Positions 1-62,920 of a stretch of DNA of 64,000 bases are shown piece by piece. The notes beneath the pieces were generated by a model. The model did no database searches. It was not told the origin of the DNA and saw nothing but the letters and a program-made list of their open reading frames with translations. Source of the stretch: Schmidtea nova (lineage: Eukaryota); contig CM097883.1 of NCBI GenBank assembly GCA_044892505.1, positions 330,832,001 to 330,896,000 on the forward strand. The letters run 5' to 3'. Every line of letters starts with the position of its first letter. The first letter of the stretch is position 1. Both the position numbers and the translations under genes were made by a program.

Positions 1-25
1 AAATATAATAATTAAATTAAGCACA
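1..25 (-). repeat. Start of 3' LTR (remainder outside window)
   Basis: aaatataataattaaattaagcaca matches 3576-3600 and begins TG on the minus strand. Confidence 0.8.
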
Positions 26-8159: not shown

Positions 8160-8560
8160 ATTAAGTAAATATAACGATAGAAATACACACTTGATAAAGG
8201 CTGTGCCGAAATATTGTGTTATTGTTTATAAAAAAAAAATTTTGATCTATAGTCATTATGAGAATTATTGATAATAATAATAAAAAAAGATCAAAGGTGA
8301 AAAAAGATAATTATGATAATAGTAATAATAATAATAAGAATAAGAATAATATTAATAAGAATAATAATAATAATAATAACTATATAATAATATGCATAGT
8401 TAAATATTAATATAAAGAATTTATTAATTAATATGAAATACACACTTGATAAAGGCTGTGCCGAAATATTGTGTTATTGTTTATAAAAAAAAATTTTGAT
8501 CTATAGTCATTATGAGAATTATTGATAATAATAATAAAAAAGATCAAAGGTGAAACAAAA
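8160..8560 (+). repeat. Tandem pair (255-bp period) of a dispersed repeat with a hammerhead-like core
   Basis: tacacacttgataaaggctgtgccgaaatattgtgttattgtttataaaa..ttttgatctatagtcattatgag occurs at about 8184 and 8439. Related copies lie at about 48130-48360, 52625-52760, 61820-62100 and 62760-62920. Confidence 0.85.
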
Positions 8561-9084: not shown

Positions 9085-9395
9085 TTAAACACATTCAAAA
9101 TATCCGTGGAACGTGCAACTTGATCATTTATTTTTGGATTAAAATATCTAATCAACAACGCCTCACAAGTTACTCGTTCCCAATAATTACTTAAACCCTT
9201 TGAAATAATTTTAAAATCAGAGATACCTATTTTTTTACTGACACATTTCCTAAAATGATCACTAATATTAGTCAATCCTTTTGGTCGGCAATGCTCAAGA
9301 ACTCGGGTGCAGAGATGACGGGCAGTCTCTCCAATGTATGTGGCATTACACCCATTACATGAAAATTGATACACGAGCTCAGAACACAAACAAAT
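9085..9395 (-). pseudogene. Penelope-like element GIY-YIG endonuclease C-terminal fragment
   Basis: SELVYQFSCNGCNATYIGETARHLCTRVLEH...DH...FKII...EALLI...PKIN has the PLE-type GIY-YIG with the CxxC insertion. Confidence 0.85.
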
Positions 9396-9398
9396 GGC

Positions 9399-12300
9399 GT
9401 TATTATTAGAATTATATAAGACTAGATCAAAATAATTTTTGGTTGTTCGATACATTTCATATATTTTCATCCCTTCATTTTCTTAAACTTTTTCTATTGA
9501 TAATTTAAAAATCATTTTAATTATTGATAATTTAATAATTTTAATTAATGAAAATTTAATATTAATTTTAATTATTGATAATTTAATAATAATTTATTAA
9601 TGAAAATTTAATATTAATTTTAATTATTGATAATTTAATAATAATTTAAATATATTTATATTTATAATTTAATATTAATTATAATATTAATTTAACATAG
9701 TAAATATTGTTATAAATAAAATTTATTATTATTAGAATTATATAAGACTAGATCAAAATAATTTTTGGTTGTTCGATACATTTCATATATTTTCATCCAT
9801 TCATTTTCTTAAACTTTTGCTATTGATAATTTAAAAATAATTTTAATTATTGATAATTTAATAATTTTTAATAATGACAATTTAATATTAATTTTAATTA
9901 TTGATAATTTAATAATTTTAAATATTGATAATTTTATATTAATTTAAATATATTAATAATTTATCATAGTAAATATAGTTATAAATAAAATATATTATTA
10001 TTAGAATTATATAAGACTAGATCAAAATAATTTTTGGTTGTTCGATACATTTCATATATTATCATCCATTCATTTTCTTAAACTTTTTCTATTGATAATT
10101 TAAAAATCATTTTAATTATTGATAATTTAATAATTTTAATTAATGAAAATTTAATATTAATTTTAATTATTGATAATTTAATAATAATTTATTAATGAAA
10201 ATTTAATATTAATTTTAATTATTGATAATTTAATAATAATTTAAATATATTTATATTTATAATTTAATATTAATTATAATATTAATTATAATATTAATTT
10301 AACATAGTAAATATTGTTATAAATAAAATTTATTATTATTAGAATTATATAAGACTAGATCAAAATAATTTTTGGTTGTTCGATACATTTCATATATTTT
10401 CATCCATTCATTTTCTTAAACTTTTGCTATTGATAATTTAAAAATAATTTTAATTATTGATAATTTAATAATTTTTAATAATGACAATTTAATATTAATT
10501 TTAATTATTGATAATTTAATAATTTTAAATATTGATAATTTTATATTAATTTAAATATATTAATAATTTATCATAGTAAATATAGTTATAAATAAAATAT
10601 ATTATTATTAGAATTATATAAGACTAGATCAAAATAATTTTTGGTTGTTCGATACATTTCATATATTATCATCCATTCATTTTCTTAAACTTTTTCTATT
10701 GATAATTTAAAAATCATTTTAATTATTGATAATTTAATAATTTTAATTAATGAAAATTTAATATTAATTTTAATTATTGATAATTTAATAATTTTAATTA
10801 ATGAAATTTTAATATTAATTTTAATTATTGATAATTTAATAATAATTTAAATATATTTATATTTATAATTTAATATTAATTATAATATTAATTATAATAT
10901 TAATTTAACATAGTAAATATTGTTATAAATAAAATTTATTATTATTAGAATTATATAAGACTAGATCAAAATAATTTTTGGTTGTTCGATACATTTCATA
11001 TATTTTCATCCATTCATTTTCTTACACTTTTGCTATTGATAATTTAATATTAATTTTAATTATTGATAATTTAATAATTTTAAATATTGATAATTTTATA
11101 TTAATTTAAATATATTAATAATTTATCATAGTAAATATAGTTATAAATAAAATATATTATTATTAGAATTATATAAGACTAGATCAAAATAATTTTTGGT
11201 TGTTCGATACATTTCATATATTATCATCCATTCATTTTCTTAAACTTTTTCTATTGATAATTTAAAAATCATTTTAATTATTGATAATTTAATAATTTTA
11301 ATTAATGAAAATTTAATATTAATTTTAATTATTGATAATTTAATAATTTTAATTAATGAAATTTTAATATTAATTTTAATTATTGATAATTTAATAATAA
11401 TTTAAATATATTTATATTTATAATTTAATATTAATTATAATATTAATTATAATATTAATTTAACATAGTAAATATTGTTATAAATAAAATTTATTATTAT
11501 TAGAATTATATAAGACTAGATCAAAATAATTTTTGGTTGTTCGATACATTTCATATATTTTCATCCATTCATTTTCTTAAACTTTTGCTATTGATAATTT
11601 AAAAATCATTTTAATTATTGATAATTTAATAATTTTAATTAATGAAAATTTAATATTAATTTTAATTATTGATAATTTTATAATTTTAAATATTGATAAT
11701 TTTATATTAATTTAAATATATTAATAATTTATCATAGTAAATATAGTTATAAATAAAATATATTATTATTAGAATTATATAAGACTAGATCAAAATAATT
11801 TTTGGTTGTTCGATACATTTCATATATTATCATCCATTCATTTTCTTAAACTTTTTCTATTGATAATTTAAAAATCATTTTAATTATTGATAATTTAATA
11901 ATTTTAATTAATGAAAATTTAATATTAATTTTAATTATTGATAATTTAATAATAATTTATTAATGAAAATTTAATATTAATTTTAATTATTGATAATTTA
12001 ATAATAATTTAAATATATTTATATTTATAATTTAATATTAATTATAATATTAATTATAATATTAATTTAACATAGTAAATATTGTTATAAATAAAATTTA
12101 TTATTATTAGAATTATATAAGACTAGATCAAAATAATTTTTGGTTGTTCGATACATTTCATATATTTTCATCCATTCATTTTCTTAAACTTTTGCTATTG
12201 ATAATTTAAAAATAATTTTAATTATTGATAATTTAATAATTTTTAATAATGACAATTTAATATTAATTTTAATTATTGATAATTTAATAATTTTAAATAT

Positions 12301-15300
12301 TGATAATTTTATATTAATTTAAATATATTAATAATTTATCATAGTAAATATAGTTATAAATAAAATATATTATTATTAGAATTATATAAGACTAGATCAA
12401 AATAATTTTTGGTTGTTCGATACATTTCATATATTATCATCCATTCATTTTCTTAAACTTTTTCTATTGATAATTTAAAAATCATTTTAATTATTGATAA
12501 TTTAATAATTTTAATTAATGAAAATTTAATATTAATTTTAATTATTGATAATTTAATAATTTTAATTAATGAAATTTTAATATTAATTTTAATTATTGAT
12601 AATTTAATAATAATTTAAATATATTTATATTTATAATTTAATATTAATTATAATATTAATTATAATATTAATTTAACATAGTAAATATTGTTATAAATAA
12701 AATTTATTATTATTAGAATTATATAAGACTAGATCAAAATAATTTTTGGTTGTTCGATACATTTCATATATTATCATCCATTCATTTTCTTAAACTTTTT
12801 CTATTGATAATTTAAAAATCATTTTAATTATTGATAATTTAATAATTTTAATTAATGAAAATTTAATATTAATTTTAATTATTGATAATTTAATAATAAT
12901 TTATTAATGAAAATTTAATATTAATTTTAATTATTGATAATTTAATAATAATTTAAATATATTTATATTTATAATTTAATATTAATTATAATATTAATTA
13001 TAATATTAATTTAACATAGTAAATATTGTTATAAATAAAATTTATTATTATTAGAATTATATAAGACTAGATCAAAATAATTTTTGGTTGTTCGATACAT
13101 TTCATATATTTTCATCCATTCATTTTCTTAAACTTTTGCTATTGATAATTTAAAAATAATTTTAATTATTGATAATTTAATAATTTTTAATAATGACAAT
13201 TTAATATTAATTTTAATTATTGATAATTTAATAATTTTAAATATTGATAATTTTATATTAATTTAAATATATTAATAATTTATCATAGTAAATATAGTTA
13301 TAAATAAAATATATTATTATTAGAATTATATAAGACTAGATCAAAATAATTTTTGGTTGTTCGATACATTTCATATATTATCATCCATTCATTTTCTTAA
13401 ACTTTTTCTATTGATAATTTAAAAATCATTTTAATTATTGATAATTTAATAATTTTAATTAATGAAAATTTAATATTAATTTTAATTATTGATAATTTAA
13501 TAATTTTAATTAATGAAATTTTAATATTAATTTTAATTATTGATAATTTAATAATAATTTAAATATATTTATATTTATAATTTAATATTAATTATAATAT
13601 TAATTATAATATTAATTTAACATAGTAAATATTGTTATAAATAAAATTTATTATTATTAGAATTATATAAGACTAGATCAAAATAATTTTTGGTTGTTCG
13701 ATACATTTCATATATTATCATCCATTCATTTTCTTAAACTTTTTCTATTGATAATTTAAAAATCATTTTAATTATTGATAATTTAATAATTTTAATTAAT
13801 GAAAATTTAATATTAATTTTAATTATTGATAATTTAATAATAATTTATTAATGAAAATTTAATATTAATTTTAATTATTGATAATTTAATAATAATTTAA
13901 ATATATTTATATTTATAATTTAATATTAATTATAATATTAATTATAATATTAATTTAACATAGTAAATATTGTTATAAATAAAATTTATTATTATTAGAA
14001 TTATATAAGACTAGATCAAAATAATTTTTGGTTGTTCGATACATTTCATATATTTTCATCCATTCATTTTCTTAAACTTTTGCTATTGATAATTTAAAAA
14101 TAATTTTAATTATTGATAATTTAATAATTTTTAATAATGACAATTTAATATTAATTTTAATTATTGATAATTTAATAATTTTAAATATTGATAATTTTAT
14201 ATTAATTTAAATATATTAATAATTTATCATAGTAAATATAGTTATAAATAAAATATATTATTATTAGAATTATATAAGACTAGATCAAAATAATTTTTGG
14301 TTGTTCGATACATTTCATATATTATCATCCATTCATTTTCTTAAACTTTTTCTATTGATAATTTAAAAATCATTTTAATTATTGATAATTTAATAATTTT
14401 AATTAATGAAAATTTAATATTAATTTTAATTATTGATAATTTAATAATTTTAATTAATGAAATTTTAATATTAATTTTAATTATTGATAATTTAATAATA
14501 ATTTAAATATATTTATATTTATAATTTAATATTAATTATAATATTAATTATAATATTAATTTAACATAGTAAATATTGTTATAAATAAAATTTATTATTA
14601 TTAGAATTATATAAGACTAGATCAAAATAATTTTTGGTTGTTCGATACATTTCATATATTATCATCCATTCATTTTCTTAAACTTTTTCTATTGATAATT
14701 TAAAAATCATTTTAATTATTGATAATTTAATAATTTTAATTAATGAAAATTTAATATTAATTTTAATTATTGATAATTTAATAATTTTAATTAATGAAAT
14801 TTTAATATTAATTTTAATTATTGATAATTTAATAATAATTTAAATATATTTATATTTATAATTTAATATTAATTATAATATTAATTTAACATAGTAAATA
14901 TTGTTATAAATAAAATTTATTATTATTAGAATTATATAAGACTAGATCAAAATAATTTTTGGTTGTTCGATACATTTCATATATTTTCATCCATTCATTT
15001 TCTTAAACTTTTGCTATTGATAATTTAAAAATAATTTTAATTATTGATAATTTAATAATTTTTAATAATGACAATTTAATATTAATTTTAATTATTGATA
15101 ATTTAATAATTTTAAATATTGATAATTTTATATTAATTTAAATATATTAATAATTTATCATAGTAAATATAGTTATAAATAAAATATATTATTATTAGAA
15201 TTATATAAGACTAGATCAAAATAATTTTTGGTTGTTCGATACATTTCATATATTATCATCCATTCATTTTCTTAAACTTTTTCTATTGATAATTTAAAAA

Positions 15301-18192
15301 TCATTTTAATTATTGATAATTTAATAATTTTAATTAATGAAAATTTAATATTAATTTTAATTATTGATAATTTAATAATTTTAATTAATGAAATTTTAAT
15401 ATTAATTTTAATTATTGATAATTTAATAATAATTTAAATATATTTATATTTATAATTTAATATTAATTATAATATTAATTATAATATTAATTTAACATAG
15501 TAAATATTGTTATAAATAAAATTTATTATTATTAGAATTATATAAGACTAGATCAAAATAATTTTTGGTTGTTCGATACATTTCATATATTATCATCCAT
15601 TCATTTTCTTAAACTTTTTCTATTGATAATTTAAAAATCATTTTAATTATTGATAATTTAATAATTTTAATTAATGAAAATTTAATATTAATTTTAATTA
15701 TTGATAATTTAATAATAATTTATTAATGAAAATTTAATATTAATTTTAATTATTGATAATTTAATAATAATTTAAATATATTTATATTTATAATTTAATA
15801 TTAATTATAATATTAATTATAATATTAATTTAACATAGTAAATATTGTTATAAATAAAATTTATTATTATTAGAATTATATAAGACTAGATCAAAATAAT
15901 TTTTGGTTGTTCGATACATTTCATATATTTTCATCCATTCATTTTCTTAAACTTTTGCTATTGATAATTTAAAAATAATTTTAATTATTGATAATTTAAT
16001 AATTTTTAATAATGACAATTTAATATTAATTTTAATTATTGATAATTTAATAATTTTAAATATTGATAATTTTATATTAATTTAAATATATTAATAATTT
16101 ATCATAGTAAATATAGTTATAAATAAAATATATTATTATTAGAATTATATAAGACTAGATCAAAATAATTTTTGGTTGTTCGATACATTTCATATATTAT
16201 CATCCATTCATTTTCTTAAACTTTTTCTATTGATAATTTAAAAATCATTTTAATTATTGATAATTTAATAATTTTAATTAATGAAAATTTAATATTAATT
16301 TTAATTATTGATAATTTAATAATTTTAATTAATGAAATTTTAATATTAATTTTAATTATTGATAATTTAATAATAATTTAAATATATTTATATTTATAAT
16401 TTAATATTAATTATAATATTAATTATAATATTAATTTAACATAGTAAATATTGTTATAAATAAAATTTATTATTATTAGAATTATATAAGACTAGATCAA
16501 AATAATTTTTGGTTGTTCGATACATTTCATATATTATCATCCATTCATTTTCTTAAACTTTTTCTATTGATAATTTAAAAATCATTTTAATTATTGATAA
16601 TTTAATAATTTTAATTAATGAAAATTTAATATTAATTTTAATTATTGATAATTTAATAATTTTAATTAATGAAATTTTAATATTAATTTTAATTATTGAT
16701 AATTTAATAATAATTTAAATATATTTATATTTATAATTTAATATTAATTATAATATTAATTTAACATAGTAAATATTGTTATAAATAAAATTTATTATTA
16801 TTAGAATTATATAAGACTAGATCAAAATAATTTTTGGTTGTTCGATACATTTCATATATTTTCATCCATTCATTTTCTTAAACTTTTGCTATTGATAATT
16901 TAAAAATCATTTTAATTATTGATAATTTAATAATTTTAATTAATGAAAATTTAATATTAATTTTAATTATTGATAATTTAATAATTTTAAATATTGATAA
17001 TTTTATATTAATTTAAATATATTGATAATTTATCATAGTAAATATAGTTATAAATAAAATATATTATTATTAGAATTATATAAGACTAGATCAAAATAAT
17101 TTTTGGTTGTTCGATACATTTCATATATTATCATCCATTCATTTTCTTAAACTTTTGCTATTGATAATTTAAAAATCATTTTAATTATTGATAATTTAAT
17201 AATTTTAATTAAGGAAAATTTAATATTAATTTTAATTATTGATAATTTAATAATAATTTATTAATGAAAATTTAATATTAATTTTAATTATTGATAATTT
17301 AATAATAATTTAAATATATTTATATTTATAATTTAATATTAATTATAATATTAATTATAATATTAATTTAACATAGTAAATATTGTTATAAATAAAATTT
17401 ATTATTATTAGAATTATATAAGACTAGATCAAAATAATTTTTGGTTGTTCGATACATTTCATATATTTTCATCCATTCATTTTCTTAAACTTTTGCTATT
17501 GATAATTTAAAAATAATTTTAATTATTGATAATTTAATAATTTTTAATAATGACAATTTAATATTAATTTTAATTATTGATAATTTAATAATTTTAAATA
17601 TTGATAATTTTATATTAATTTAAATATATTAATAATTTATCATAGTAAATATAGTTATAAATAAAATATATTATTATTAGAATTATATAAGACTAGATCA
17701 AAATAATTTTTGGTTGTTCGATACATTTCATATATTATCATCCATTCATTTTCTTAAACTTTTTCTATTGATAATTTAAAAATCATTTTAATTATTGATA
17801 ATTTAATAATTTTAATTAATGAAAATTTAATATTAATTTTAATTATTGATAATTTAATAATTTTAATTAATGAAATTTTAATATTAATTTTAATTATTGA
17901 TAATTTAATAATAATTTAAATATATTTATATTTATAATTTAATATTAATTATAATATTAATTATAATATTAATTTAACATAGTAAATATTGTTATAAATA
18001 AAATTTATTATTATTAGAATTATATAAGACTAGATCAAAATAATTTTTGGTTGTTCGATACATTTCATATATTTTCATCCATTCATTTTCTTACACTTTT
18101 GCTATTGATAATTTTATATTAATTTAAATATATTAATAATTTATCATAGTAAATATAGTTATAAATAAAATATATTATTATTAGAATTATAT
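9399..18192. repeat. AT-rich satellite array, 29 core motifs, long (325-338 bp) and short (269 bp) monomers in higher-order repeats
   Basis: The core ACTAGATCAAAATAATTTTTGGTTGTTCGATACATTTC recurs at 9421, 9747, 10016, 10354, 10623 and onward to 17692 and 18029. Confidence 0.97.
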
Positions 18193-18396
18193 AAATGGCA
18201 CTGTGTTATCGCGCAATAAAACAATCAGCTTTAATTTCTTGTTCTGTTTCATTGATTTTTACGGTATTTCGATATAAATGCTTTCTATATTTTTCAATCA
18301 TTTATTTACTTTATTTTATTTTAATACTATTTTTGTTAAGTTTTATTTATTATCCTACTAAAGGATTTGGGAATTTATATGTTTAATTGCTTCCAG

Positions 18397-27730: not shown

Positions 27731-28181
27731 CAAGCTCCTAGAAAACGATGAGTTATGATATATGAGTACATATATCAATGTTTTAATAGCTTACAAATTG
27801 TTTTAATAATAAATATAGAATGAATTTTAAGCGTTATTTTGAATGGATGAAATTAAACCCATAACTAAACAAAGTCAAAATAAAAATAAAAATAAAAATA
27901 GGTAACATTAATAAGAAAAACAATACCTAATACTTAAATAAAAATAAATTTAATAATACATTTGCTTATTGCTATAAGGTTAACTATGGATATTTTTTGT
28001 TTTTAATTGAAGTACCTATAATCGTTTTATGTTGAGCATACTTTTACTAAATCAGGTTAGCATTTAGCTAAGCAAAGTTTACATTTCATAGGTTGTAAAT
28101 ACATTTACATATAAAGTTAGTAAATGCCTGTTTATTGAAACATATACAACACCTCTCAATCATTAAGGCCATCCAATAATA

Positions 28182-29179
28182 CTTGGTTGGTTCACGAAGT
28201 ACTTGCACTCGATATCAAAAATAAGAGATATTATAATAACTTTATGTTTCCATTGTAGAGAATTTATAAAAGGTTAGAAATCTTCATTTTGTTTTATTTA
28301 ACCAATATTTGTTTAGAGCAAATATTTAATCATTCAAAATATGGCAATTTTAAGCATTGAATATCGGTCGGTGATTGAGTTTTTTGTAATGCGCGAGGCT
28401 TCAAGATTAGAGATATTAGCAATGCTCCAAGAGACGTATAAAGAAGACTGTCCATATGATAGAACTATTTATTATTGGATTAGTGAATTCAAAAGTGGAA
28501 GAATGTCAGTTATTGATGAATCAAAGCAAGGAAGACCGATTGAAATTGATGTAGAGAGAAAGAAAAATCATATTGAATCGTTAATTAAAGACGAACGAAG
28601 GATTACAGTTAAAAAATTTGGCGAAGGAGGTCAATGCCAGTGTCGGTAAGTGTCATGAAATGATAAAAGAGATGGGTGTGCGGAAGTTGTGCAGCAAGTT
28701 TGTTCCTTATTTTTTATCAGTTGAAATGTGTGAAAAAAGGCTAATGATTTGTGAACACAATCTTGCACTGTTCGAGGAACATAGTGAGTCATTTTTGAAA
28801 AACATTATAACGGAAGACGAGACACTACTAAGTCTTTATATTCCTGAAAGTAAAAGATCTTCAGCAGAATGGAAGTTTCTAGATGAAAAGCCGACAAAGA
28901 AGCTGAAATCTGGAACCATTCACCGTCGAAATTTGATGCTCTCGATTTTTTGGGATAGTGATGGAATAATCAATATTGATTTCACAGATAGACAAGTTAA
29001 AATTAACAGTGTTTATTATTCTAATCTCATTGAACAAACTCGGAAGCTTCGACGAAAAAAGAAAAACACAAATTTGTGGCTGCTTCACGACAATGCTCCA
29101 ATTCATGCATCAAAACTTGTGTCGGAGAAAATTGTTCGATGTGGCTTTTCAACATTGGAACATCCAGCTTATAGTCCTG
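28182..29179 (+). mobile_element. mariner (D34D) element, left part
   Basis: TA, then TIR CTTGGTTGGTTCACGAAGTACTTGCA. Transposase 28341-29179 with an HTH region, a frameshift near 28617, IITEDET, LLHDNAPIH and HPAYSP, cut at 29179. Confidence 0.92.
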
Positions 29180-29530
29180 AGTAGGAGGCTATGAGCGCAC
29201 TGAACCACTACCCCCCATGTGTGTATATTACGTAATCGCTCGGACTTTACATAGCACACGTGATTATGTAATTCTCGGGTTTTACATAGCACACACATTA
29301 TTACGTAATATTTCTCGGCCGTTTACATAGCACACAAATTATGACGTCATGATTACGTAATCGAGGTCAAAGGTCAAGGTCATTTTTTTTGTTTTAATTT
29401 TAATTTTTTGGCGCCATTTTTGAATTTTACTGCCGTTTTGTTTAAATAAAGTAAATTATTTTTTTTGGCGCAATTTTTGAATTTTAGAGTCATTTTGTTT
29501 AATCAAAGTAAATTTTTAGCGCAATTTTCA
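29180..29530 (+). promoter_or_regulatory. Terminal motif cluster of the palindromic element (mirrored at about 43280-43630)
   Basis: TTACGTAA at 29228, 29301 and 29353; ACATAGCACAC three times; TGACGTCA at 29342; AGGTCA three times at 29364-29382; TTTTGGCGC at 29406 and 29463. Confidence 0.5.
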
Positions 29531-29825
29531 AAAGTTTTAAATAATTTTTTTTTATTTTATTATTTTATTTAATATTATTTTTATTACTAATAATATTTTA
29601 TAAGTATTATTATTTTATTTAATATTATTTTTATATAATTATTTTTTATTACAATTAGTATTTTATAAGAATTATTATTATTTTTATTACAATTATTTTT
29701 ATTACAATTATTTTTATTACAATTAATAATATTTTTATTATTATTATTATTATTATTTTTTATTATTACTTTTATCATTATTACAATTATTAATATTTTT
29801 TATTACAATTTTTATTACAATTATT

Positions 29826-29840
29826 ATTATTATTATTACA

Positions 29841-29899
<59 letters not shown>
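29826..29899. repeat. (TTA)n microsatellite (mirror falls in the N gap 42803-43010)
   Basis: Long trinucleotide run. Confidence 0.9.
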
Positions 29900-29900
<1 letters not shown>

Positions 29901-31739
29901 ATCTATCAAGGAAAGAGAAGACAAGATAAAGAACATGTGCTTTAATATTGCCAGTCCTAAAGAGCGGTGATTAAATGCCTGTGCCTAAAAGACACGCTGG
30001 GCAAGTAATCGCGTCCACAAGGGTCGTCGGTGCCTCCCCCAAAGTGGGGTCAATAGGACCTGGGCATCAATAGTTCGCTATCTATAGCGATCACGTCTCA
30101 GATAAGCAAGGGTAGCCAGCTACCAAGACATCATCTACAACGTAGTGTTTCATACGCCATGAATGTGCCGGCAAGATATCGTCATAGACACTAATGACCG
30201 AAATTAATTAATATGTTGTCAAAAAATAAGCAAACATCGCAGAGGCCTCCAATTTGGTTGGATTACGGTCGCCCACCACAACGACTGGCATGCTTCGAAA
30301 AAAATAAAGGGTGAAAACGGAACCCACCCACCCTAATATATTTTAAAATAAAAAACAAATTAAATTTTTCTCTTCTTTTTGTCCTCAAGCATCTAGTTTT
30401 ATCTAAAATTAATAAATAATTTAATTTTCAAATAAATTACCAGTCCCAAAAGTTTCTCCCGGCTCGTTGAAATAATTATCTAAAATAAAATTATTAATAA
30501 ATATCATATTTGTTTTAATTAATTGTTTGTACTGAAATACATTTATTTAAAAAAAAAAACTATTACTAATTTAACTAAACATTATTTAAATTATTAGTTT
30601 ACACTGAAATACAAAATTTTTTCTAAAATAATTACTTAAAGTTAAATTAATCTTGTTTAAATTATTTATTTTCCTTAAACTGCGGAAATTTACAATATTT
30701 ATAAAAAGTTAATTTAAAATTATTATTAAGTTTAATTATTATAAAATTTATTAATTAAATTTGTTTTAATTTATTTTTTGCATTAAAATGCATTTATTTA
30801 AAAAATAATAACAAAATTTACTAAAATACTAAATTAAATTTAAATTAGCAAAACTAAAATTAAATTGTTTTGATTAATAACTTTCCTAAGTGTGAAAATT
30901 TAATAAAATAAAAAGTCAATTTAAAATTAATGCTAAGATTAATTATTATTAAATTGATTAATGAAATTTGTTGTGATAATAATTCCCTTAAAAATGTAAA
31001 AATTTGAATATTTAAACTTTAATTTACAAAAATTAGCTAAAATATTACACAAATAATTTATGTTAATCTTAATTTAATTACTTTAAAATAAAAATACTTA
31101 CATAACCGATTTCGAATTTTTTCCTCCATATATTAAACATTTCATCATACCTAAAAATCTAAATTAAAAGTATATTTATAAATAAAAAATAAACTTACAA
31201 TTATCCAATTTCATTTAAATTAACATCTAAATAAAAAGTAATTAATTAGTTAAAAATTAAAAGATTTCATACTCTTAATTTTGAATTTCATCTAAAATAA
31301 AATAATTAATTTGAAATAATAAAACAAAAAGACTTACTTGAATAATTTATTATTTAAAAAGTTTTTACTTAAGCTTTGCATTAACCTAAATTAAACTTAT
31401 AAATTATTGTAAACTATAATATAACTTTTAAAATTTTTATTTAAACTATAATTTGTAATATAACTTTGAAAATTTTTATTTAATTTACAATCTAACTTAT
31501 ATTAAGATTTTATTTTAGAGTTTGTAATAAATTTTATTTTAACTTTAGATTTAATTTTCAATTTAGTAGAATTGTCTAAATTGATGAGAAATAGGAGTTT
31601 TAGTTGAACTTTAAATAAAAGTGGTTCATGAATGACCTAATTAATATCAGTTAAACATGTTGGAGTATGTAAATCTTGCGTCCAATGGCTATATTTATGT
31701 GTTTTTTTATCAAACATTCAGACTAATTTGATCGGAACC

Positions 31740-32170
31740 CCGTGTATCAAAGTTGATGGCGGCATCTTATTACATGGAATTCGATGGGTCAAAGATGATA
31801 TCGGCATATTAACGGTTGTTGAATTTTAATGGATGGGATCGTAATTGTACTATATTTAATATTTTATATACAAATTAACATACACGTGTGTTTTTTTTTA
31901 TCAAATATTGGGATTAATTTTATTGGATTTGGGAACCAGGTGGGTCAAAGGTGATAGGTAAATGGTACTATATTATTACATGAGATGCGATGGGTGAAAA
32001 TCGATAGGCGAATGACGCTATCTTGGGATGTGATGGGACAAAGCTGATAGGTAAATGGTGTTATATTATTACATGGAATGCGATGGGTCAAAACTGATAA
32101 GCAAATGACACTATCTTCTAACATGGGATGCGATGAGTCAAAACTGATAGAATAATGGCGGTATCATTGG
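31740..32170 (+). repeat. Degenerate ~45-50-bp tandem repeat (mirror about 40550-40980)
   Basis: Recurrent catgg(a/g)atgcgatgggtcaaa(a)ctgata(g/a)g.aaatg. Confidence 0.7.
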
Positions 32171-33589
32171 GTAGATCACAGTTATAGTATAAAGTTTTAT
32201 TGGATGGATTCGTAACTGTCAGGTAATTTATTAACTAATTTATGTGTAAATAAGAGGGATTTCTTAGTGAAAACATCCTGTTAAGGGTTTTTGTACTTAT
32301 TTTTTTAGTAATCATTTTGTCATTTATTAGTGGTATTTGACAACAATTGATAACAAATACTGGTTTTCGGAGTAAATCGATGAGGTTTAGACAATCAATT
32401 GGACAAATACATTGATTCAATCATGAACACAAGTTGCAACATTTGTCAAATTTTTCTAAAATATTTCAGATAATGCATGGTGGGTGTATACGATAAATGA
32501 TTGTGACCTGTATGAGACATGTGTGAATTATTCATGATATGCATTTGTTGAGCTGCATGCATATGTGAGTCACTTCATGTTTGTTGTACTCGTATTGCAT
32601 GCAAATTGTTTTACTAATATCCCAAAATTTTAAAATTAAACACTGACCAGTGAAATATTTTTAATAAAAACTTTAATAAAAAAGACAAATTGACTGATTT
32701 ATTAATTATCCACAATACATGTGAAATGATATTTTCCCAACTCTTTCCTCAAAATGATAAATCTTCCATCTATCAATGCAGATTTTACATTTTACATAAG
32801 ATCGATCCCAGTTGACATCCATATTCGAAATGGTATAATCTCTGGGGTCCAATATATTCTTTTAATTGATAAAGCTATTGGATATTAAAAGTTTCATCAG
32901 TTTTTCTAAAAATCAAATTTAAAATGAAAATAATTAAAATTTATCATTGGATGTTAAATTTGACATTAAATGAATAACAAATGATATTTATTTATGAATA
33001 TTTAATTACTAGATATAATTTGATAAAATATTGAATAAATGTGCCCAAAACAATACAGATGGGTTTATAATCACCAAGATTCTGCTACTAGAGTTCTGGT
33101 GCTCATTAACTTTGTTAGTCAGGTAAACGAATTACATTTGTTGAAGCAACTCTGTGTAAACATTGTCTTATTTGATATGTGTTAAAGTGATAGTTTACCG
33201 GGTAACATGAGCATTTCTAGCAATGTAGCATTTTCATCATGGTCATTATCAAATATAGTGAAATTCATGTGATCATATATTGGTTTGAAGATAAGCTCAA
33301 AAACCATCACAAATAGGTTATGTTACCAAATGTTCTGCTATCAAGGTTTATGATATCATTTTAAAGTAAAAAATTATCAATTTTACTTTAGAAAAAGTAT
33401 ATTTGTTATTAAAGATATATTCAAGTGGAAAGCTTTTGGGCTAAAGAAAAAAAAAGGGTTCTGTTACCAAAGATGATGCTACCGAGGTTCTGCCACTATG
33501 ATAAATAAATGACAAAAAGCATCACATGATACTGAGAGGGTAAATACACATGATAAATTATCATAATATAGAAATCATTACATACAAAA

Positions 33590-34520
33590 TATTTTATACA
33601 GTATAGTACAAACATACACACACGCAAAATATATAAAAATTTATGACATACAGACAAATTATCATCACATTATAGTGCAAAACACAAATGAAATATCATT
33701 ACATACAAGAATTACACACAAAGGATATCATCACATACATACAAAATAAACACACACATACAAAATCGAATCACAAAATGTCATCATACTATAGTGTAAT
33801 AGCATCTAAAATACATCAAAAATATACAAAATATCAAAAACACATAGAAAATCAACAAAGATGCACAAAAATATCAAGACTACATAGAAATTCATCACAC
33901 AGAAAATATCAAAAATACAGAGAAATTCATTACACACACACAAAATATCATCACATATATGAAATATCATCACAAAATGTCATCATACTTTAGTGCACTA
34001 ACATTGAAAATACACTAAAAATCATCAAAAGTACACACGAAATATCAGAAATATTTTGAAACTTATCAAGAATTGCAAACAAAATATCAAGAATACATAG
34101 AAATTCATCACATACACACAAATCATCAAAAATACACAAAATATCCAAAACACATGAAAATCATCAAACATACACACAAATTATCAAAATATACATAGAA
34201 ATTCATCACACATACAAATATTATCACATATATGAAGTATCATCACAAAGTTTTATCATACTATAGTTCTTTAACATAGAAAATATATCAAAAATCAACA
34301 AAGATACACAGAAAATATCAAAAATACAGAGAAATTCATCACACACACACAAAATATCGTCACAAAATGACATAGAAAACACATAGAAAACACATAGAAA
34401 ACACAGAAAGCATATAAAAAATACAAAGAAAATCATCAAAAATACAGATCAAATACAGATCAAATATCAAAAAATACATAGAAAATCATCACATACATCA
34501 GAAATTATCATTGAAATATT
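33590..34520 (+). repeat. A/C-rich degenerate minisatellite (mirror about 38200-39130)
   Basis: Recurrent aaatatcatcacatacac and aaaatacatagaaa units; these account for the spurious ORFs here. Confidence 0.8.
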
Positions 34521-34803
34521 ATGAAAGTGTACGGAAATATTGTGAAATGTATGTTCAAGTAAGAAGCTTTCAAACCTATCACAATTTGTGTCTGTTACTG
34601 GATAAAACTGAAACATTGTGATAATGTAATTGATTAAAGATCATAATGGGTTATGTTAATGAATAATGTTGATTGTAACAATAATAACCATATGTGGGAG
34701 TAATAAGCTTTGGCAGATAAAAACCATCACAAAAGAGGTTCTGCTAATAAAGGTTCTGCTAGAAAGGTTCATTATTCACTTTAACAAATAATAAACATTT
34801 AAA

Positions 34804-35113
34804 ATGAACATTATAACAAATTTTATGAACGAAAACCCAAGTGGAAAAGAAAATGGTAAATTTATTTTTTAATTTATTATCATTTAGTATTAATTTAGGT
34901 AATATCAATAATTCGATATCAATAAATATCAATAATTCGATGTTAGAAAATGCGGAAGAAAATGGTATTTGATCATTAATTTAGTAAATTATTTAATTTT
35001 TACTTTAGGTGATGTAAATATGACTGGACAAACTACCGTACAAACTAAGATTGTTAATAATGAGAATATTATGAATAATGGAGTTATAACTGATGTGATA
35101 TTGAATGCCCAAT
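34804..35113 (+). other. Spliced micro-exon gene fragment, copy 1 (mirror 37610-37919, minus)
   Basis: ATG exon 34804-34855, 43-bp intron, exon 34899-34964, 44-bp intron, exon 35009-35113, then a GTAAGT donor. All introns are phase 1 and the spliced frame is open. Product unknown. Confidence 0.65.
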
Positions 35114-35759
35114 GTAAGTATTGATTAATTTTTAATTTTTTTATTACATTTTGATAATTAATTTAATAATTATTAAATTTTTGTATATAATTTGTAATAA
35201 TTCAAATAATTTTAACTTTGCGCAAACAATTAATTTAAACAAATTTTTTTAATATTTCTTTATTATTTTAAATTTGACATATATTTTCTAAAAATTCATA
35301 TTTTTATTAATTTATTTTTATATTTTAATGAATTTTCAAATGTGTTTTGGATAAATACATAGAATTCTCACAATTAAGGTATTAAATTTTACATTACTGC
35401 CTAAATTTCATAGTAACAACCATTGCAATCAAATAATATGGCAATATTATCGATATGCAAATTACCAAGTCAACTATATTTTCGACTCACCACTAAGACC
35501 GTCCATTATTTATTTCCTTTTATTTCTAACATTATCTCCTTTTAAATCAGTTTTCATGCACTAAAACATGCCCATTGCATTATTTTAAATAATGTTGATT
35601 GTAACAATAATAACTATATGTGGGAGTAATAAGCTTTGGCAGATAAAAACCATCACAAAAGATGTTCTGCTAATAAAGGTTCTGCTAATAAAGGTTCTGC
35701 TAATAAAGGTTCTGCTAGAAAGGTTCATTATTCACTTTAACAAATAATAAACATTTAAA

Positions 35760-36069
35760 ATGAACATTATAACAAGTTTTATGAACGAAAACCCAAGTGG
35801 AAAAGAAAATGGTAAATTTATTTTTTAATTTATTATCATTTAGTATTAATTTAGGTAATATCAATAATTCGATATCAATAAATATCAATAAATCGATGTT
35901 AGAAAATGCAGAAGAAAATGGTATTTGATCATTAATTTAGTAAATTATTTAACTTTTACTTTAGGTGATGTAAATATGACTGGACAAACTACCGTACAAA
36001 CTAAGATTGTTAATAATGAGAATATTATGAATAATGGAGTTATAAATGATGTGATATTGAATGCCCAAT
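35760..36069 (+). other. Spliced micro-exon gene fragment, copy 2 (mirror 36654-36963, minus)
   Basis: Direct duplicate of copy 1 at offset 956 with a few substitutions and intact splice sites. Confidence 0.65.
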
Positions 36070-39000: not shown

Positions 39001-42000
39001 TTTGTGTGTAATTCTTGTATGTAATGATATTTCATTTGTGTTTTGCACTATAATGTGATGATAATTTGTCTGTATGTCATAAATTTTTATATATTTTGCG
39101 TGTGTGTATGTTTGTACTATACTGTATAAAATATTTTGTATGTAATGATTTCTATATTATGATAATTTATCATGTGTATTTACCCTCTCAGTATCATGTG
39201 ATGCTTTTTGTCATTTATTTATCATAGTGGCAGAACCTCGGTAGCATCATCTTTGGTAACAGAACCCTTTTTTTTTCTTTAGCCCAAAAGCTTTCCACTT
39301 GAATATATCTTTAATAACAAATATACTTTTTCTAAAGTAAAATTGATAATTTTTTACTTTAAAATGATATCATAAACCTTGATAGCAGAACATTTGGTAA
39401 CATAACCTATTTGTGATGGTTTTTGAGCTTATCTTCAAACCAATATATGATCACATGAATTTCACTATATTTGATAATGACCATGATGAAAATGCTACAT
39501 TGCTAGAAATGCTCATGTTACCCGGTAAACTATCACTTTAACACATATCAAATAAGACAATGTTTACACAGAGTTGCTTCAACAAATGTAATTCGTTTAC
39601 CTGACTAACAAAGTTAATGAGCACCAGAACTCTAGTAGCAGAATCTTGGTGATTATAAACCCATCTGTATTGTTTTGGGCACATTTATTCAATATTTTAT
39701 CAAATTATATCTAGTAATTAAATATTCATAAATAAATATCATTTGTTATTCATTTAATGTCAAATTTAACATCCAATGATAAATTTTAATTATTTTCATT
39801 TTAAATTTGATTTTTAGAAAAACTGATGAAACTTTTAATATCCAATAGCTTTATCAATTAAAAGAATATATTGGACCCCAGAGATTATACCATTTCGAAT
39901 ATGGATGTCAACTGGGATCGATCTTATGTAAAATGTAAAATCTGCATTGATAGATGGAAGATTTATCATTTTGAGGAAAGAGTTGGGAAAATATCATTTC
40001 ACATGTATTGTGGATAATTAATAAATCAGTCAATTTGTCTTTTTTATTAAAGTTTTTATTAAAAATATTTCACTGGTCAGTGTTTAATTTTAAAATTTTG
40101 GGATATTAGTAAAACAATTTGCATGCAATACGAGTACAACAAACATGAAGTGACTCACATATGCATGCAGCTCAACAAATGCATATCATGAATAATTCAC
40201 ACATGTCTCATACAGGTCACAATCATTTATCGTATACACCCACCATGCATTATCTGAAATATTTTAGAAAAATTTGACAAATGTTGCAACTTGTGTTCAT
40301 GATTGAATCAATGTATTTGTCCAATTGATTGTCTAAACCTCATCGATTTACTCCGAAAACCAGTATTTGTTATCAATTGTTGTCAAATACCACTAATAAA
40401 TGACAAAATGATTACTAAAAAAATAAGTACAAAAACCCTTAACAGGATGTTTTCACTAAGAAATCCCTCTTATTTACACATAAATTAGTTAATAAATTAC
40501 CTGACAGTTACGAATCCATCCAATAAAACTTTATACTATAACTGTGATCTACCCAATGATACCGCCATTATTCTATCAGTTTTGACTCATCGCATCCCAT
40601 GTTAGAAGATAGTGTCATTTGCTTATCAGTTTTGACCCATCGCATTCCATGTAATAATATAACACCATTTACCTATCAGCTTTGTCCCATCACATCCCAA
40701 GATAGCGTCATTCGCCTATCGATTTTCACCCATCGCATCTCATGTAATAATATAGTACCATTTACCTATCACCTTTGACCCACCTGGTTCCCAAATCCAA
40801 TAAAATTAATCCCAATATTTGATAAAAAAAAACACACGTGTATGTTAATTTGTATATAAAATATTAAATATAGTACAATTACGATCCCATCCATTAAAAT
40901 TCAACAACCGTTAATATGCCGATATCATCTTTGACCCATCGAATTCCATGTAATAAGATGCCGCCATCAACTTTGATACACGGGGTTCCGATCAAATTAG
41001 TCTGAATGTTTGATAAAAAAACACATAAATATAGCCATTGGACGCAAGATTTACATACTCCAACATGTTTAACTGATATTAATTAGGTCATTCATGAACC
41101 ACTTTTATTTAAAGTTCAACTAAAACTCCTATTTCTCATCAATTTAGACAATTCTACTAAATTGAAAATTAAATCTAAAGTTAAAATAAAATTTATTACA
41201 AACTCTAAAATAAAATCTTAATATAAGTTAGATTGTAAATTAAATAAAAATTTTCAAAGTTATATTACAAATTATAGTTTAAATAAAAATTTTAAAAGTT
41301 ATATTATAGTTTACAATAATTTATAAGTTTAATTTAGGTTAATGCAAAGCTTAAGTAAAAACTTTTTAAATAATAAATTATTCAAGTAAGTCTTTTTGTT
41401 TTATTATTTCAAATTAATTATTTTATTTTAGATGAAATTCAAAATTAAGAGTATGAAATCTTTTAATTTTTAACTAATTAATTACTTTTTATTTAGATGT
41501 TAATTTAAATGAAATTGGATAATTGTAAGTTTATTTTTTATTTATAAATATACTTTTAATTTAGATTTTTAGGTATGATGAAATGTTTAATATATGGAGG
41601 AAAAAATTCGAAATCGGTTATGTAAGTATTTTTATTTTAAAGTAATTAAATTAAGATTAACATAAATTATTTGTGTAATATTTTAGCTAATTTTTGTAAA
41701 TTAAAGTTTAAATATTCAAATTTTTACATTTTTAAGGGAATTATTATCACAACAAATTTCATTAATCAATTTAATAATAATTAATCTTAGCATTAATTTT
41801 AAATTGACTTTTTATTTTATTAAATTTTCACACTTAGGAAAGTTATTAATCAAAACAATTTAATTTTAGTTTTGCTAATTTAAATTTAATTTAGTATTTT
41901 AGTAAATTTTGTTATTATTTTTTAAATAAATGCATTTTAATGCAAAAAATAAATTAAAACAAATTTAATTAATAAATTTTATAATAATTAAACTTAATAA

Positions 42001-43636
42001 TAATTTTAAATTAACTTTTTATAAATATTGTAAATTTCCGCAGTTTAAGGAAAATAAATAATTTAAACAAGATTAATTTAACTTTAAGTAATTATTTTAG
42101 AAAAAATTTTGTATTTCAGTGTAAACTAATAATTTAAATAATGTTTAGTTAAATTAGTAATAGTTTTTTTTTTTAAATAAATGTATTTCAGTACAAACAA
42201 TTAATTAAAACAAATATGATATTTATTAATAATTTTATTTTAGATAATTATTTCAACGAGCCGGGAGAAACTTTTGGGACTGGTAATTTATTTGAAAATT
42301 AAATTATTTATTAATTTTAGATAAAACTAGATGCTTGAGGACAAAAAGAAGAGAAAAATTTAATTTGTTTTTTATTTTAAAATTTATTAGGGTGGGTGGG
42401 TTCCGTTTTCACCCTTTATTTTTTTCGAAGCATGCCAGTCGTTGTGGTGGGCGACCGTAATCCAACCAAATTGGAGGCCTCTGCGATGTTTGCTTATTTT
42501 TTGACAACATATTAATTAATTTCGGTCATTAGTGTCTATGACGATATCTTGCCGGCACATTCATGGCGTATGAAACACTACGTTGTAGATGATGTCTTGG
42601 TAGCTGGCTACCCTTGCTTATCTGAGACGTGATCGCTATAGATAGCGAACTATTGATGCCCAGGTCCTATTGACCCCACTTTGGGGGAGGCACCGACGAC
42701 CCTTGTGGACGCGATTACTTGCCCAGCGTGTCTTTTAGGCACAGGCATTTAATCACCGCTCTTTAGGACTGGCAATATTAAAGCACATGTTCTTTATCTT
42801 GTNNNNNNNNNNNNNNNNNNNNNNNNNNNNNNNNNNNNNNNNNNNNNNNNNNNNNNNNNNNNNNNNNNNNNNNNNNNNNNNNNNNNNNNNNNNNNNNNNN
42901 NNNNNNNNNNNNNNNNNNNNNNNNNNNNNNNNNNNNNNNNNNNNNNNNNNNNNNNNNNNNNNNNNNNNNNNNNNNNNNNNNNNNNNNNNNNNNNNNNNNN
43001 NNNNNNNNNNAAAATATTAATAATTGTAATAATGATAAAAGTAATAATAAAAAATAATAATAATAATAATAATAAAAATATTATTAATTGTAATAAAAAT
43101 AATTGTAATAAAAATAATTGTAATAAAAATAATAATAATTCTTATAAAATACTAATTGTAATAAAAAATAATTATATAAAAATAATATTAAATAAAATAA
43201 TAATACTTATAAAATATTATTAGTAATAAAAATAATATTAAATAAAATAATAAAATAAAAAAAAATTATTTAAAACTTTTGAAAATTGCGCTAAAAATTT
43301 ACTTTGATTAAACAAAATGACTCTAAAATTCAAAAATTGCGCCAAAAAAAATAATTTACTTTATTTAAACAAAACGGCAGTAAAATTCAAAAATGGCGCC
43401 AAAAAATTAAAATTAAAACAAAAAAATGACCTTGACCTTTGACCTCGATTACGTAATCATGACGTCATAATTTGTGTGCTATGTAAACGGCCGAGAAATA
43501 TTACGTAATAATGTGTGTGCTATGTAAAACCCGAGAATTACATAATCACGTGTGCTATGTAAAGTCCGAGCGATTACGTAATATACACACATGGGGGGGT
43601 AGTGGTTCAGTGCGCTCATAGCCTCCTACTGTCCTG

Positions 43637-62759: not shown

Positions 62760-62920
62760 ATCATAATTATCTTTTTTCACCTTTGATCTTTTTTTATTAT
62801 TATTATCAATAATTCTCATAATGACTATAGATCAAAATTTTTTTTTATAAACAATAACACAATATTGTTTATAAAAAAAAATTTTGATCTATAGTCATTA
62901 TGAGAATTATTGATAATAAT
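62760..62920. repeat. Core-less foldback palindrome of the hammerhead-like repeat family
   Basis: ataattctcataatgactatagatcaaaa..ataaacaata acac aatattgtttat..ttttgatctatagtcattatgagaattat. Confidence 0.85.

What the first reader, a model, noticed from the sequence alone, without database searches (positions are those of the whole stretch)
29180..43630. 14.45-kb element that is one giant hairpin, with Polinton-type ends and a clean 6-bp target duplication
Seen: the insert splits a mariner gene, is bounded by GTCCTG on both sides, and starts AGTAGG and ends CCTACT. Its two ~7.2-kb arms are near-exact reverse complements around a 28-nt loop (at least one substitution, near 30340 vs 42383). It has no long ORF. 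Established: 6-bp TSDs, AG..CT termini and long TIRs typify Polintons/Mavericks, which replicate by protein-primed strand displacement, but their TIRs are normally at most about 1 kb around a unique coding core. Inference: this is a snap-back (self-complementary, defective-interfering-like) Polinton derivative made by template switching and then integrated in trans by a helper integrase. That would be a non-autonomous class that exists as a covalently closed hairpin and could generate long dsRNA.
Basis: partly seen in the sequence, partly recalled or inferred. Interest (0 to 1): 0.92.

Follow-up and report, generated by a model that had tools for sequence, protein, structure and literature searches.

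The report
Giant fold-back element inside a mariner
A 14.4-kb mobile element without genes, whose ends resemble those of Polinton/Maverick virus-like transposons, sits inside a mariner transposon and is assembled as an almost perfect hairpin, but an assembly gap in one arm leaves the hairpin itself unproven.

Summary
An insert at 29180-43630 splits a complete 1.3-kb mariner. It is flanked by GTCCTG on both sides and starts AGTAGG and ends CCTACT. As assembled it is a 7.2-kb-armed palindrome around a 28-nt loop.

The insertion is real: the two mariner pieces share one reading frame once one duplicated copy is discounted.

The 6-bp duplication and the AGT-AGG-AGG end fit Polinton/Maverick ends. 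The other 6-bp superfamily, IS3EU/GingerRoot, has TA..TA ends and does not fit.

The arms hold no gene remnant. They are AT-rich, host-like DNA made of satellites, exon-like pieces and a repeat that also occurs elsewhere in the window.

The apex is a fold-back junction. Native sequence runs through the loop and then turns back at a 6-nt microhomology.

The right arm is the last 6.4 kb of a 36-kb contig, which ends at the N gap, so the window cannot show that the palindrome exists in the genome. I put this at about even odds.

The arm differences cluster in the outermost 204 nt. This fits a fold-back younger than the ends better than a hairpin that transposed as such.

The "covalently closed hairpin" claim is unsupported.

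The parts
28179..43938 (+). Host mariner copy, about 1.3 kb without the insert. Its transposase gene is broken by one insertion (this element) and at least one frameshift.
   Evidence: Pfam Transposase_1 at 8.9e-15 on the left piece. Own inverted ends at 28179-28232 and 43885-43938, 54 nt at 85%. ORF pieces.
29174..29179 (.). Left copy of the 6-bp target duplication, GTCCTG
43631..43636 (.). Right copy of the 6-bp target duplication, GTCCTG
29180..43630 (.). The element as assembled: 14451 positions, of which 208 are N. G+C is 24.3%. No gene.
29180..29799 (+). Outer left inverted end, 620 nt. It starts AGT-AGG-AGG.
   Evidence: Pairs with 43011-43630 apart from two one-base homopolymer differences, both within the first 204 nt
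43011..43630 (-). Outer right inverted end, 620 nt. It lies on a separate contig anchored in the mariner 3' piece.
29227..29385 (+). Subterminal repeats: three units of about 35-41 nt, each with TTACATAGCACAC and a TTACGTAA palindrome. They are followed by TGACGTCA and three AGGTCA. The same array is mirrored at about 43425-43583.
   Evidence: All six TTACGTAA and all six 13-mers of the window lie in the two ends.
29404..29517 (+). 57-nt tandem repeat, about 2 copies, each with a TTTGGCGC box. Mirrored in the right end.
29552..29902 (+). AT-rich minisatellite and (TTA)n run of the left arm. Its inner 121 nt (29800-29920, including 21 unique nt) face the gap.
42803..43010 (.). Assembly gap of 208 N in the right arm. 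Symmetry predicts 121 nt.
29921..36347 (+). Inner left arm, 6427 nt
   Evidence: Reverse complement of 36376-42802 with one substitution at 30339/42384
36376..42802 (-). Inner right arm, 6427 nt. It forms the last 6.4 kb of contig 6520-42802.
36348..36375 (+). 28-nt non-palindromic loop. It is native sequence, the inverted counterpart of 35473-35500.
36262..36383 (-). Segment Y', an inverted 93% copy of Y (35472-35593). It runs through the loop and ends in the ATATAT microhomology where the strand turns back.
   Evidence: (pair I7)
34662..36268 (+). Two copies of a repeat about 926 nt apart (34662-35312 and 35588-36268, 94-98% alike). They carry exon-like pieces with GT..AG borders and GGTTCTGCTA repeats. 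A second inversion junction lies at its right edge.
29921..30340 (.). 420-nt block of 45% G+C with unknown content

Best explanation
This is a real, young insertion of a gene-less element with terminal inverted repeats into a mariner copy.

Step 1, shown: both ends were joined to a staggered cut 6 bp wide. This is the width made by retroviral-type (rve) integrases of Polintons/Mavericks.

Step 2, inferred: the element has no gene, so the enzyme came from another element. The ends (AGT-AGG-AGG..., AG..CT) make a Polinton/Maverick-type helper the best candidate.

Step 3, shown as junction anatomy: the body is a fold-back copy of one side. The top strand runs through the left arm and the 28-nt loop as native sequence up to about 36381. 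It then turns back at an ATATAT microhomology 28 nt upstream and repeats the left arm in reverse.

Step 4, inferred: a growing 3' end snapped back on itself and was extended.

Step 5, inferred, leaning only: the fold-back is younger than the ends. It was made at this locus when a break inside the element was repaired, with the newly copied end captured by the right terminal repeat. It was probably not made before integration.

The subterminal repeat arrays are probably binding sites for the helper's terminal-binding protein or for host transcription factors. This is inferred.
For: - Insertion: a 6-bp duplication, exact limits of the inverted repeat, and mariner pieces in one frame.
- End type: published Maverick end motifs, the 6-bp duplication and the range of inverted-end lengths (PMC8097293). 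Six bp is characteristic of Polinton, and rve integrases typically make 6-bp duplications (PMC10045372; PMC12220804).
- Rival 6-bp superfamily: IS3EU/GingerRoot has TA..TA ends, which is not met here.
- Fold-back junction: the loop and left arm align to the paralogous segment Y at 93%. The homology stops at the microhomology.
- Adapter excluded: the loop is native sequence, so a missed sequencing adapter is not the cause.
- Young inner duplication: two of three differences lie in the outermost 204 of 7047 aligned nt. The binomial P is 0.0025. Counting homopolymer runs of 6 or more, P is roughly 0.001-0.005.
- Precedents for growth of inverted ends by inverted recruitment of inner sequence: butterfly polintons with ~2-kb ends that hold genes (bioRxiv 10.1101/2025.02.07.637071), and Galileo copies made of two long ends (PMC3573991).
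Against: - The right arm is the last 6.4 kb of contig 6520-42802 and stops at the N gap. A contig that ends in an inverted copy of itself is also what a chimeric read or a gap-filling error gives.
- Any clone, mate-pair or overlap argument I could construct from the window is symmetric between the two arms, so the window cannot decide.
- No independent assembly was found.
- The assembler may not have resolved the inner arms separately. Their identity, and hence the clustering of differences, may exist by construction.
- No autonomous partner with the same ends could be looked for.
- No Polinton gene remnant is present.
- From own knowledge, long palindromes with short loops are unstable in cells.
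Confidence: 0.5

Rival explanations
1. The fold-back is an artefact. The insertion and its inverted ends of at least 620 nt are real. A chimeric molecule made in the tube, by polymerase snap-back during amplification or end repair, or a gap-filling step, made the contig turn back on itself at 36348-36381. It then ran back along the left arm until the microsatellite. Under this reading the true right interior of the element is missing from the scaffold.
For: - The palindrome is the last 6.4 kb of a contig that ends at an N gap.
- The window is a gapped draft with 10 N runs and contigs of 0.2-5 kb beside this one of 36 kb.
- The inner arms are virtually identical, while the separately anchored outer 204 nt differ twice.
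- Two strand switches lie within about 110 nt of each other at the apex, as in polymerase chimeras.
- Microhomology-mediated inverted chimeras are a known product of strand-displacing polymerases (own knowledge).
Against: - The structure closes on a separately anchored right end with the same duplication.
- True reads of the missing right interior would have competed with the chimera in a 36-kb contig.
- The one substitution between the inner arms (30339/42384) shows that the arms are not a simple copy.
- The loop is native sequence, not an adapter.
Confidence: 0.4
2. A Polinton-type linear replicon snapped back during protein-primed strand-displacement replication. It became a full-length palindrome with two identical ends and was then integrated as such by a helper integrase. 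That would define a defective-interfering-like class.
For: - Ends and duplication are of Polinton type.
- The apex junction has the direction and microhomology expected for a nascent strand copied from the left end.
- Snap-back defective genomes are full-length palindromes by definition (PMC13506859). From own knowledge, they are described for adenovirus and for yeast linear plasmids.
Against: - The arms are not one side of a recognisable Polinton. They hold no gene remnant, have host-like composition, and contain host repeats and exon-like pieces.
- Differences cluster in the outermost 204 nt instead of being spread evenly.
- No second palindromic copy is known.
- All objections to the reality of the palindrome apply here too.
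- "Covalently closed" does not follow from the model.
Confidence: 0.12
3. This is a fold-back copy, made of two long inverted ends, of a cut-and-paste family that is not a Polinton. It arose by abortive gap repair with template switching after an excision, as proposed for Galileo and P elements.
For: - Non-autonomous copies made only of two long inverted ends, and ends extended by inverted recruitment of inner sequence, are documented for Galileo. Its authors warn that the length of the ends does not classify an element (PMC3573991; PMC4168063).
- Subterminal repeat arrays, as seen here, are typical transposase binding sites in several superfamilies.
- A 7-bp duplication is not strictly excluded.
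Against: - Among superfamilies with 6-bp duplications, only Polinton has AG..CT ends. IS3EU/GingerRoot has TA..TA.
- Galileo makes 7-8-bp duplications. From own knowledge, Drosophila Foldback makes 9-bp duplications.
- The symmetric solution here is 6 bp.
Confidence: 0.15

Closest known systems
Polinton/Maverick virus-like transposons
   Same: 6-bp target duplication. AG..CT ends with a 3-nt periodic start (AGT-AGG-AGG, against the published (AGT)2). Inverted ends of hundreds of bp. At least 620 nt are anchored separately here.
   Different: No protein-primed polymerase, integrase, ATPase, protease or capsid gene, and no remnant of one. As assembled the inverted ends are 7.2 kb, against 46-1447 bp in vertebrates and ~2 kb in butterflies, with no unique core. 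Composition equals that of the host.
Fold-back-type copies of cut-and-paste transposons (Galileo of the P superfamily; Drosophila Foldback)
   Same: A non-autonomous copy made of two long inverted ends with almost no middle. Subterminal tandem repeats. Ends extended by inverted duplication of inner sequence.
   Different: Galileo ends reach about 1.26 kb and its duplications are 7-8 bp. Here the arms are 7.2 kb, mostly not tandem repeats, and the duplication is 6 bp with AG..CT ends.
Snap-back defective genomes of linear replicons (adenovirus defective genomes, hairpin derivatives of yeast linear plasmids: own knowledge; definition in PMC13506859)
   Same: A full-length palindrome built from one end of a parent by a strand switch of the polymerase, giving two identical ends.
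   Different: Those are free replicons known from infected cells or cytoplasm. This one is integrated in a chromosome with a target duplication, and its arms are not recognisably viral.
Palindrome formation by fold-back priming at a broken end (Tetrahymena rDNA palindrome; fold-back inversions in yeast and tumours: own knowledge)
   Same: A short inverted repeat near a free 3' end, a short non-palindromic centre, and arms of many kb that are identical at birth.
   Different: Here the microhomology is only about 6 nt. The event would have had to be closed by capture of the right terminal repeat, which is not part of the known cases.
IS3EU/GingerRoot
   Same: 6-bp target duplication
   Different: Their ends are TA..TA, occasionally TG..CA (PMC10045372). 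Here they are AG..CT.

Membership tests
Polinton/Maverick | 6-bp target site duplication | tested here: met
   GTCCTG on both sides, and the mariner frame is restored. 7 bp is not strictly excluded.
Polinton/Maverick | Conserved end motif: 5'-AG...CT-3', often (AGT)2//(ACT)2 or (AG)3//(CT)3 | tested here: met
   AGTAGG//CCTACT has AG..CT and matches (AGT)2 at 5 of 6 places (motif from PMC8097293). The motif data are from vertebrates, and the host here is unknown.
Polinton/Maverick | Terminal inverted repeats of about 50-1500 bp around a unique coding core | tested here: not met
   As assembled, the arms are 7168 nt around a 28-nt loop with no unique core. Only the outer 620 nt are anchored separately.
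Polinton/Maverick | Genes for protein-primed polymerase B, rve integrase, ATPase, protease and capsid proteins | tested here: not met
   No ORF over 101 aa. 30 stop-to-stop pieces gave no significant Pfam hit, the best at E = 0.005 and below the curated cut-off. This is expected for a non-autonomous copy.
Polinton/Maverick (as a non-autonomous member, Repbase rule) | Same duplication length, and ends aligned at positions 1-11 with at most 1 mismatch to an autonomous family (PMC4455052) | not testable with these tools
   No host genome is on hand, and fetching virus-like elements of animals was barred (for the rule).
Fold-back-type elements (Foldback, Galileo) | Element made almost wholly of two long inverted ends | tested here: met
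   subject to the gap.
Fold-back-type elements (Foldback, Galileo) | Duplication of 7-8 bp (Galileo, P superfamily) or 9 bp (Foldback) | tested here: not met
   6 bp here. Galileo value from PMC4168063. Foldback value from own knowledge.
IS3EU/GingerRoot | 6-bp duplication with TA..TA ends | tested here: not met
   The duplication length is met, but the ends are AG..CT (PMC10045372).
Snap-back defective genome of a protein-primed replicon | Full-length palindrome derived from one end of an identifiable parent genome | tested here: inconclusive
   The palindrome and switch junction are present. The parent is not identifiable, the arms are not viral, and the reality of the palindrome is unverified.

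The most novel reading that the evidence does not exclude
A gene-less, fully palindromic derivative of a Polinton/Maverick-type replicon arose by snap-back during replication and was then integrated by a helper integrase. This would be the first defective-interfering-like class of these virus-like elements preserved in a chromosome. It would also be indirect sequence evidence for their linear, strand-displacing replication.
Probability: 0.12. Interest if true: 0.85.

Novelty: new variant of a known kind. Interest (0 to 1): 0.45.

Why it matters
If the palindrome is real, it would be by far the longest-armed fold-back copy of an element with Polinton/Maverick-type ends that I found described. 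The published inverted ends I could find reach about 1.4-2 kb.

Its apex preserves the exact strand-switch junction. That junction is rare direct evidence for how such inverted ends grow. The replication of Polintons has not been observed directly, so a chromosomal record of a snap-back product would bear on it.

A 7-kb inverted repeat inside a transposon is also a candidate source of hairpin RNA and a likely fragile site.

If it is an artefact, the case is still a useful warning. An element with inverted ends lets a fold-back misassembly close perfectly on the true far end, target duplication included.

Tried and rejected
Searches that found nothing:
- Independent assemblies. Exact look-ups of an arm ORF, of the ORF that crosses the apex and of an ORF that crosses the left junction found nothing on record. 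The same held for a host ORF.
- Host species. A host exon search found nothing. A COMM-domain exon found one protein, 81% identical, with only a UniParc number. BEL/Pao-like pol pieces and the mariner suggest an animal with an AT-rich genome.
- Gene remnants. 30 stop-to-stop pieces of the arm were searched apart against Pfam, with no significant hit.
- RNA genes. Rfam gave nothing at gathering scores. Only a chance-level L20-leader match appeared at E = 0.5, mirrored in both arms. No tRNA was found.
- The 45% G+C block. Fold z-scores were -0.5 and -1.6, and there was no plasmid match.

Ideas rejected:
- Missed sequencing adapter at the apex. Rejected because the loop is the inverted counterpart of a paralogous segment of the same arm.
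- Two elements inserted head to head. Rejected because a single duplication flanks the whole structure and there are no element ends at the apex.

Papers not held: Kapitonov and Jurka 2006, and Daniell and Mullenbach 1978.

This was against the rule on sequences from memory. None of these letters went into a tool call, a note or this report, and no conclusion rests on them.
Full report
OBSERVATION. GTCCTG lies at 29174-29179 and at 43631-43636. The insert starts AGTAGG at 29180 and ends CCTACT at 43630. The inverted repeat begins exactly at the A of AGTAGG, because the next base outward differs between the two ends. A 6-bp duplication is the symmetric solution. A 7-bp one is not strictly excluded, because the base after each GTCCTG copy is A.

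The host is a complete mariner of about 1.3 kb. It has its own 54-nt inverted ends at 28179-28232 and 43885-43938. Its left transposase piece hits Pfam Transposase_1 at 8.9e-15. The left piece ends ...AYSP and the right piece starts (P)DLDPSDF, in one frame once one duplicated copy is discounted. Besides this insertion, the gene carries at least one frameshift. The two junctions therefore belong to a single real insertion event.

THE GAP. The window holds 10 N runs. The one at 42803-43010 (208 N) cuts the right arm. Both sides of it align to the left arm in register. 43011-43630 pairs with 29180-29799, and 36376-42802 pairs with 29921-36347. The gap therefore faces 29800-29920, which is 121 nt: about 100 nt of (TTA)n run and 21 unique nt. 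The estimated gap is 87 nt longer than symmetry predicts. No reading frame is at stake, and I did not fill it.

The consequence matters more than the length. Contig 6520-42802 (36.3 kb) holds the left flank, the left arm, the loop and 6.4 kb of the right arm, and it ends there. The right end and the mariner 3' piece lie on the next contig. Continuity of the right arm is not shown.

ANATOMY. The arms are 7168 nt. The right arm has 7047 read bases plus the gap. The loop is exactly 28 nt, at 36348-36375. From the outside inward the arm holds:
- a 206-nt end of 41% G+C, with three subterminal units that each carry TTACATAGCACAC and a TTACGTAA palindrome, then TGACGTCA and three AGGTCA;
- a 57-nt tandem repeat with TTTGGCGC boxes;
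- a 350-nt AT-rich minisatellite and (TTA)n run;
- a 420-nt block of 45% G+C with unknown content;
- 1.2 kb of 13% G+C;
- 50/93-nt tandem repeats;
- about 1 kb of A/C-rich minisatellite;
- two copies of a repeat about 926 nt apart, which carry exon-like pieces with GT..AG borders.

The longest stop-to-stop piece is 105 aa, in low-complexity sequence. 30 pieces searched apart gave no significant Pfam hit. Rfam found nothing. The element's G+C is 24.3%, against 25.3% for the window. A GGTTCTGCTA repeat of the arms recurs in a tandem repeat at 55155-55460, within the span of the host gene pieces. The arms are host-like DNA, not one side of a recognisable Polinton.

THE APEX. The stretch 36262-36383 is an inverted 93% copy (Y') of segment Y at 35472-35593 of the same arm. 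Aligned to Y, the left arm and the whole 28-nt loop are native, continuous sequence. Homology stops in a short ATATAT stretch, and from there the sequence is the reverse complement of what lies 28 nt upstream. This is the anatomy of a 3' end that folded back on a 6-nt microhomology and was extended. The left arm with the loop is the original, and the right arm is the copy. Because the loop is native sequence, a missed adapter is excluded. A second inversion junction lies about 80 nt from the loop, where the second repeat copy is joined to inverted Y'. It is present in both arms, so it came first.

ARM DIFFERENCES. Only three differences exist. Two are one-base homopolymer differences at 29210 and 29383, and one is a substitution at 30339/42384. 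Two of the three lie in the outermost 204 of 7047 aligned nt, with binomial P = 0.0025. Of the 29 homopolymer runs of at least 6 nt in the arm, only one or two lie there, giving P of roughly 0.001-0.005 that both length differences fall there.

Two readings are open. The inner duplication may be much younger than the ends. Alternatively, the assembler could tell the arms apart only near the unique flanks, so the inner identity exists partly by construction. Neither reading fits a palindrome that was perfect at integration and then aged evenly. The test is post hoc and rests on three events.

WHICH SUPERFAMILY.
- Six bp is the characteristic duplication of Polinton, and rve integrases typically make it (PMC10045372; PMC12220804).
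- Vertebrate Mavericks have end motifs 5'-(AGT)2//(ACT)2-3' or (AG)3//(CT)3, with inverted ends of 46-1447 bp (PMC8097293).
- AGTAGG matches (AGT)2 at 5 of 6 places, and the start reads AGT-AGG-AGG.
- The other superfamily with 6-bp duplications, IS3EU/GingerRoot, has TA..TA ends, which is not met.
- Ginger1 and Ginger2 make 4-5-bp duplications with TGT ends (PMC2836005).
- Galileo makes 7-8-bp duplications.

By the Repbase rule, a non-autonomous element is filed by duplication length plus ends that match an autonomous family at positions 1-11 with at most one mismatch (PMC4455052). That could not be tested here. I put Polinton/Maverick-type ends at about 0.6.

REAL OR ARTEFACT. The arguments for a real palindrome are these:
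- The structure closes on a separately anchored right end with the same duplication.
- The loop is native sequence.
- The inner arms differ at one base, so they are not a simple copy.
- True reads of a different right interior should have competed within a 36-kb contig.

The arguments for an artefact are these:
- The fold-back is the end of a contig in a gapped draft.
- Polymerase snap-back chimeras have the same junction anatomy.
- There are two switches within about 110 nt.
- Once a contig has turned back inside an element with inverted ends, it becomes identical to the true far end. Overlaps and mate pairs that lie within one arm then support the false join as well as the true one.

I could construct no argument from within the window that breaks this symmetry. 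Look-ups for independent assemblies found nothing. I put a real palindrome at about 0.5-0.55.

MECHANISM. The shown steps are an integrase-type insertion with a 6-bp stagger and a fold-back junction at a microhomology. The rest is inferred:
- The enzyme was supplied in trans, because the element has no gene.
- The helper was most likely of Polinton/Maverick type.
- A nascent 3' end snapped back and recopied the left arm.
- If this happened in the cell, it more likely happened at this locus, by break repair closed through annealing of the recopied end to the right terminal repeat, than before integration.

"Covalently closed hairpin" does not follow from it, and long dsRNA is untested.

COMPARISON.
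- Inverted ends do grow by inverted recruitment of inner sequence in this kind of element and in others. Butterfly polintons have ~2-kb ends that hold genes. Galileo has non-autonomous copies made of two long ends, up to 1.26 kb, and its authors warn that the length of the ends does not classify an element.
- Snap-back defective genomes are full-length palindromes by definition.
- The present element would be the extreme of this series: 7.2-kb arms, no core and no genes. I file it as a new variant of a known kind if real.

LEFT OUT AND SLIP. I did not scan the viral or metagenome contig collections with the element's letters. I did not look up the ORF that lies inside the terminal repeat. I did not fetch Polinton comparators. 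Hits from any of these could be virus-like elements of animals, so these steps are referred.

Noticed in passing
window 9255-18215: A satellite of about 9 kb: 29 monomers of about 270-340 nt in a 944-nt higher-order period, with many copies 98-100% alike. It is assembled without a gap inside the same 36-kb contig.
   Followed up: no
window 17-2447 (-): Pol pieces of an LTR retrotransposon (RVT_1, DUF7047, Integrase_H2C2), BEL/Pao- or Gypsy-like.
   Followed up: partly
window 8181-8330, 48127-48358, 62795-62920: A family of small fold-back repeats beside (TAA)n runs. The fullest copy, at 48127-48358, has arms of about 98 nt and a 21-nt loop. Two of the three lie at or within about 50 nt of an N gap. 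Their ends are unrelated to those of the large element.
   Followed up: partly
window 29180-29520 and mirror 43290-43630: The ends are packed with short palindromes and repeats. All six TTACGTAA of the 64-kb window lie here, with one TGACGTCA and three AGGTCA in a row per end, and TTTGGCGC boxes in a 57-nt tandem repeat. From own knowledge they resemble animal transcription-factor sites. They could equally be binding sites for a terminal protein or an integrase.
   Followed up: partly
window 29921-30340 and mirror 42383-42802: A 420-nt block of 45% G+C in surroundings of 12-24%. It has no Rfam, Pfam or plasmid match and no unusual fold. Its content is unknown.
   Followed up: yes
window 30340-31560 (-) and 34790-35115, 35746-36071 (+): Exon-like pieces with GT..AG borders and short AT-rich introns inside the arms. 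They include a start codon followed by three N-rich exons, present twice. They look like captured host gene fragments. No splice model was tested.
   Followed up: no
window 55155-55460: A tandem repeat of about 114 nt next to a gap, among the host gene pieces. It shares the GGTTCTGCTA-containing repeat with the arms of the element at 84-89% identity.
   Followed up: partly
window 36262-36275 and mirror: A second inversion junction about 80 nt from the loop. The second copy of the ~926-nt-spaced repeat is joined to an inverted copy of segment Y at a short AT-rich microhomology.
   Followed up: yes
window 7378-7728 (+) and 50528-61622 (-): Host gene pieces: a COMM-domain exon, and several exons of a multi-pass membrane protein. 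The only relative found is one protein 81% identical to the COMM exon, known only by a UniParc number. The host species was not identified.
   Followed up: partly
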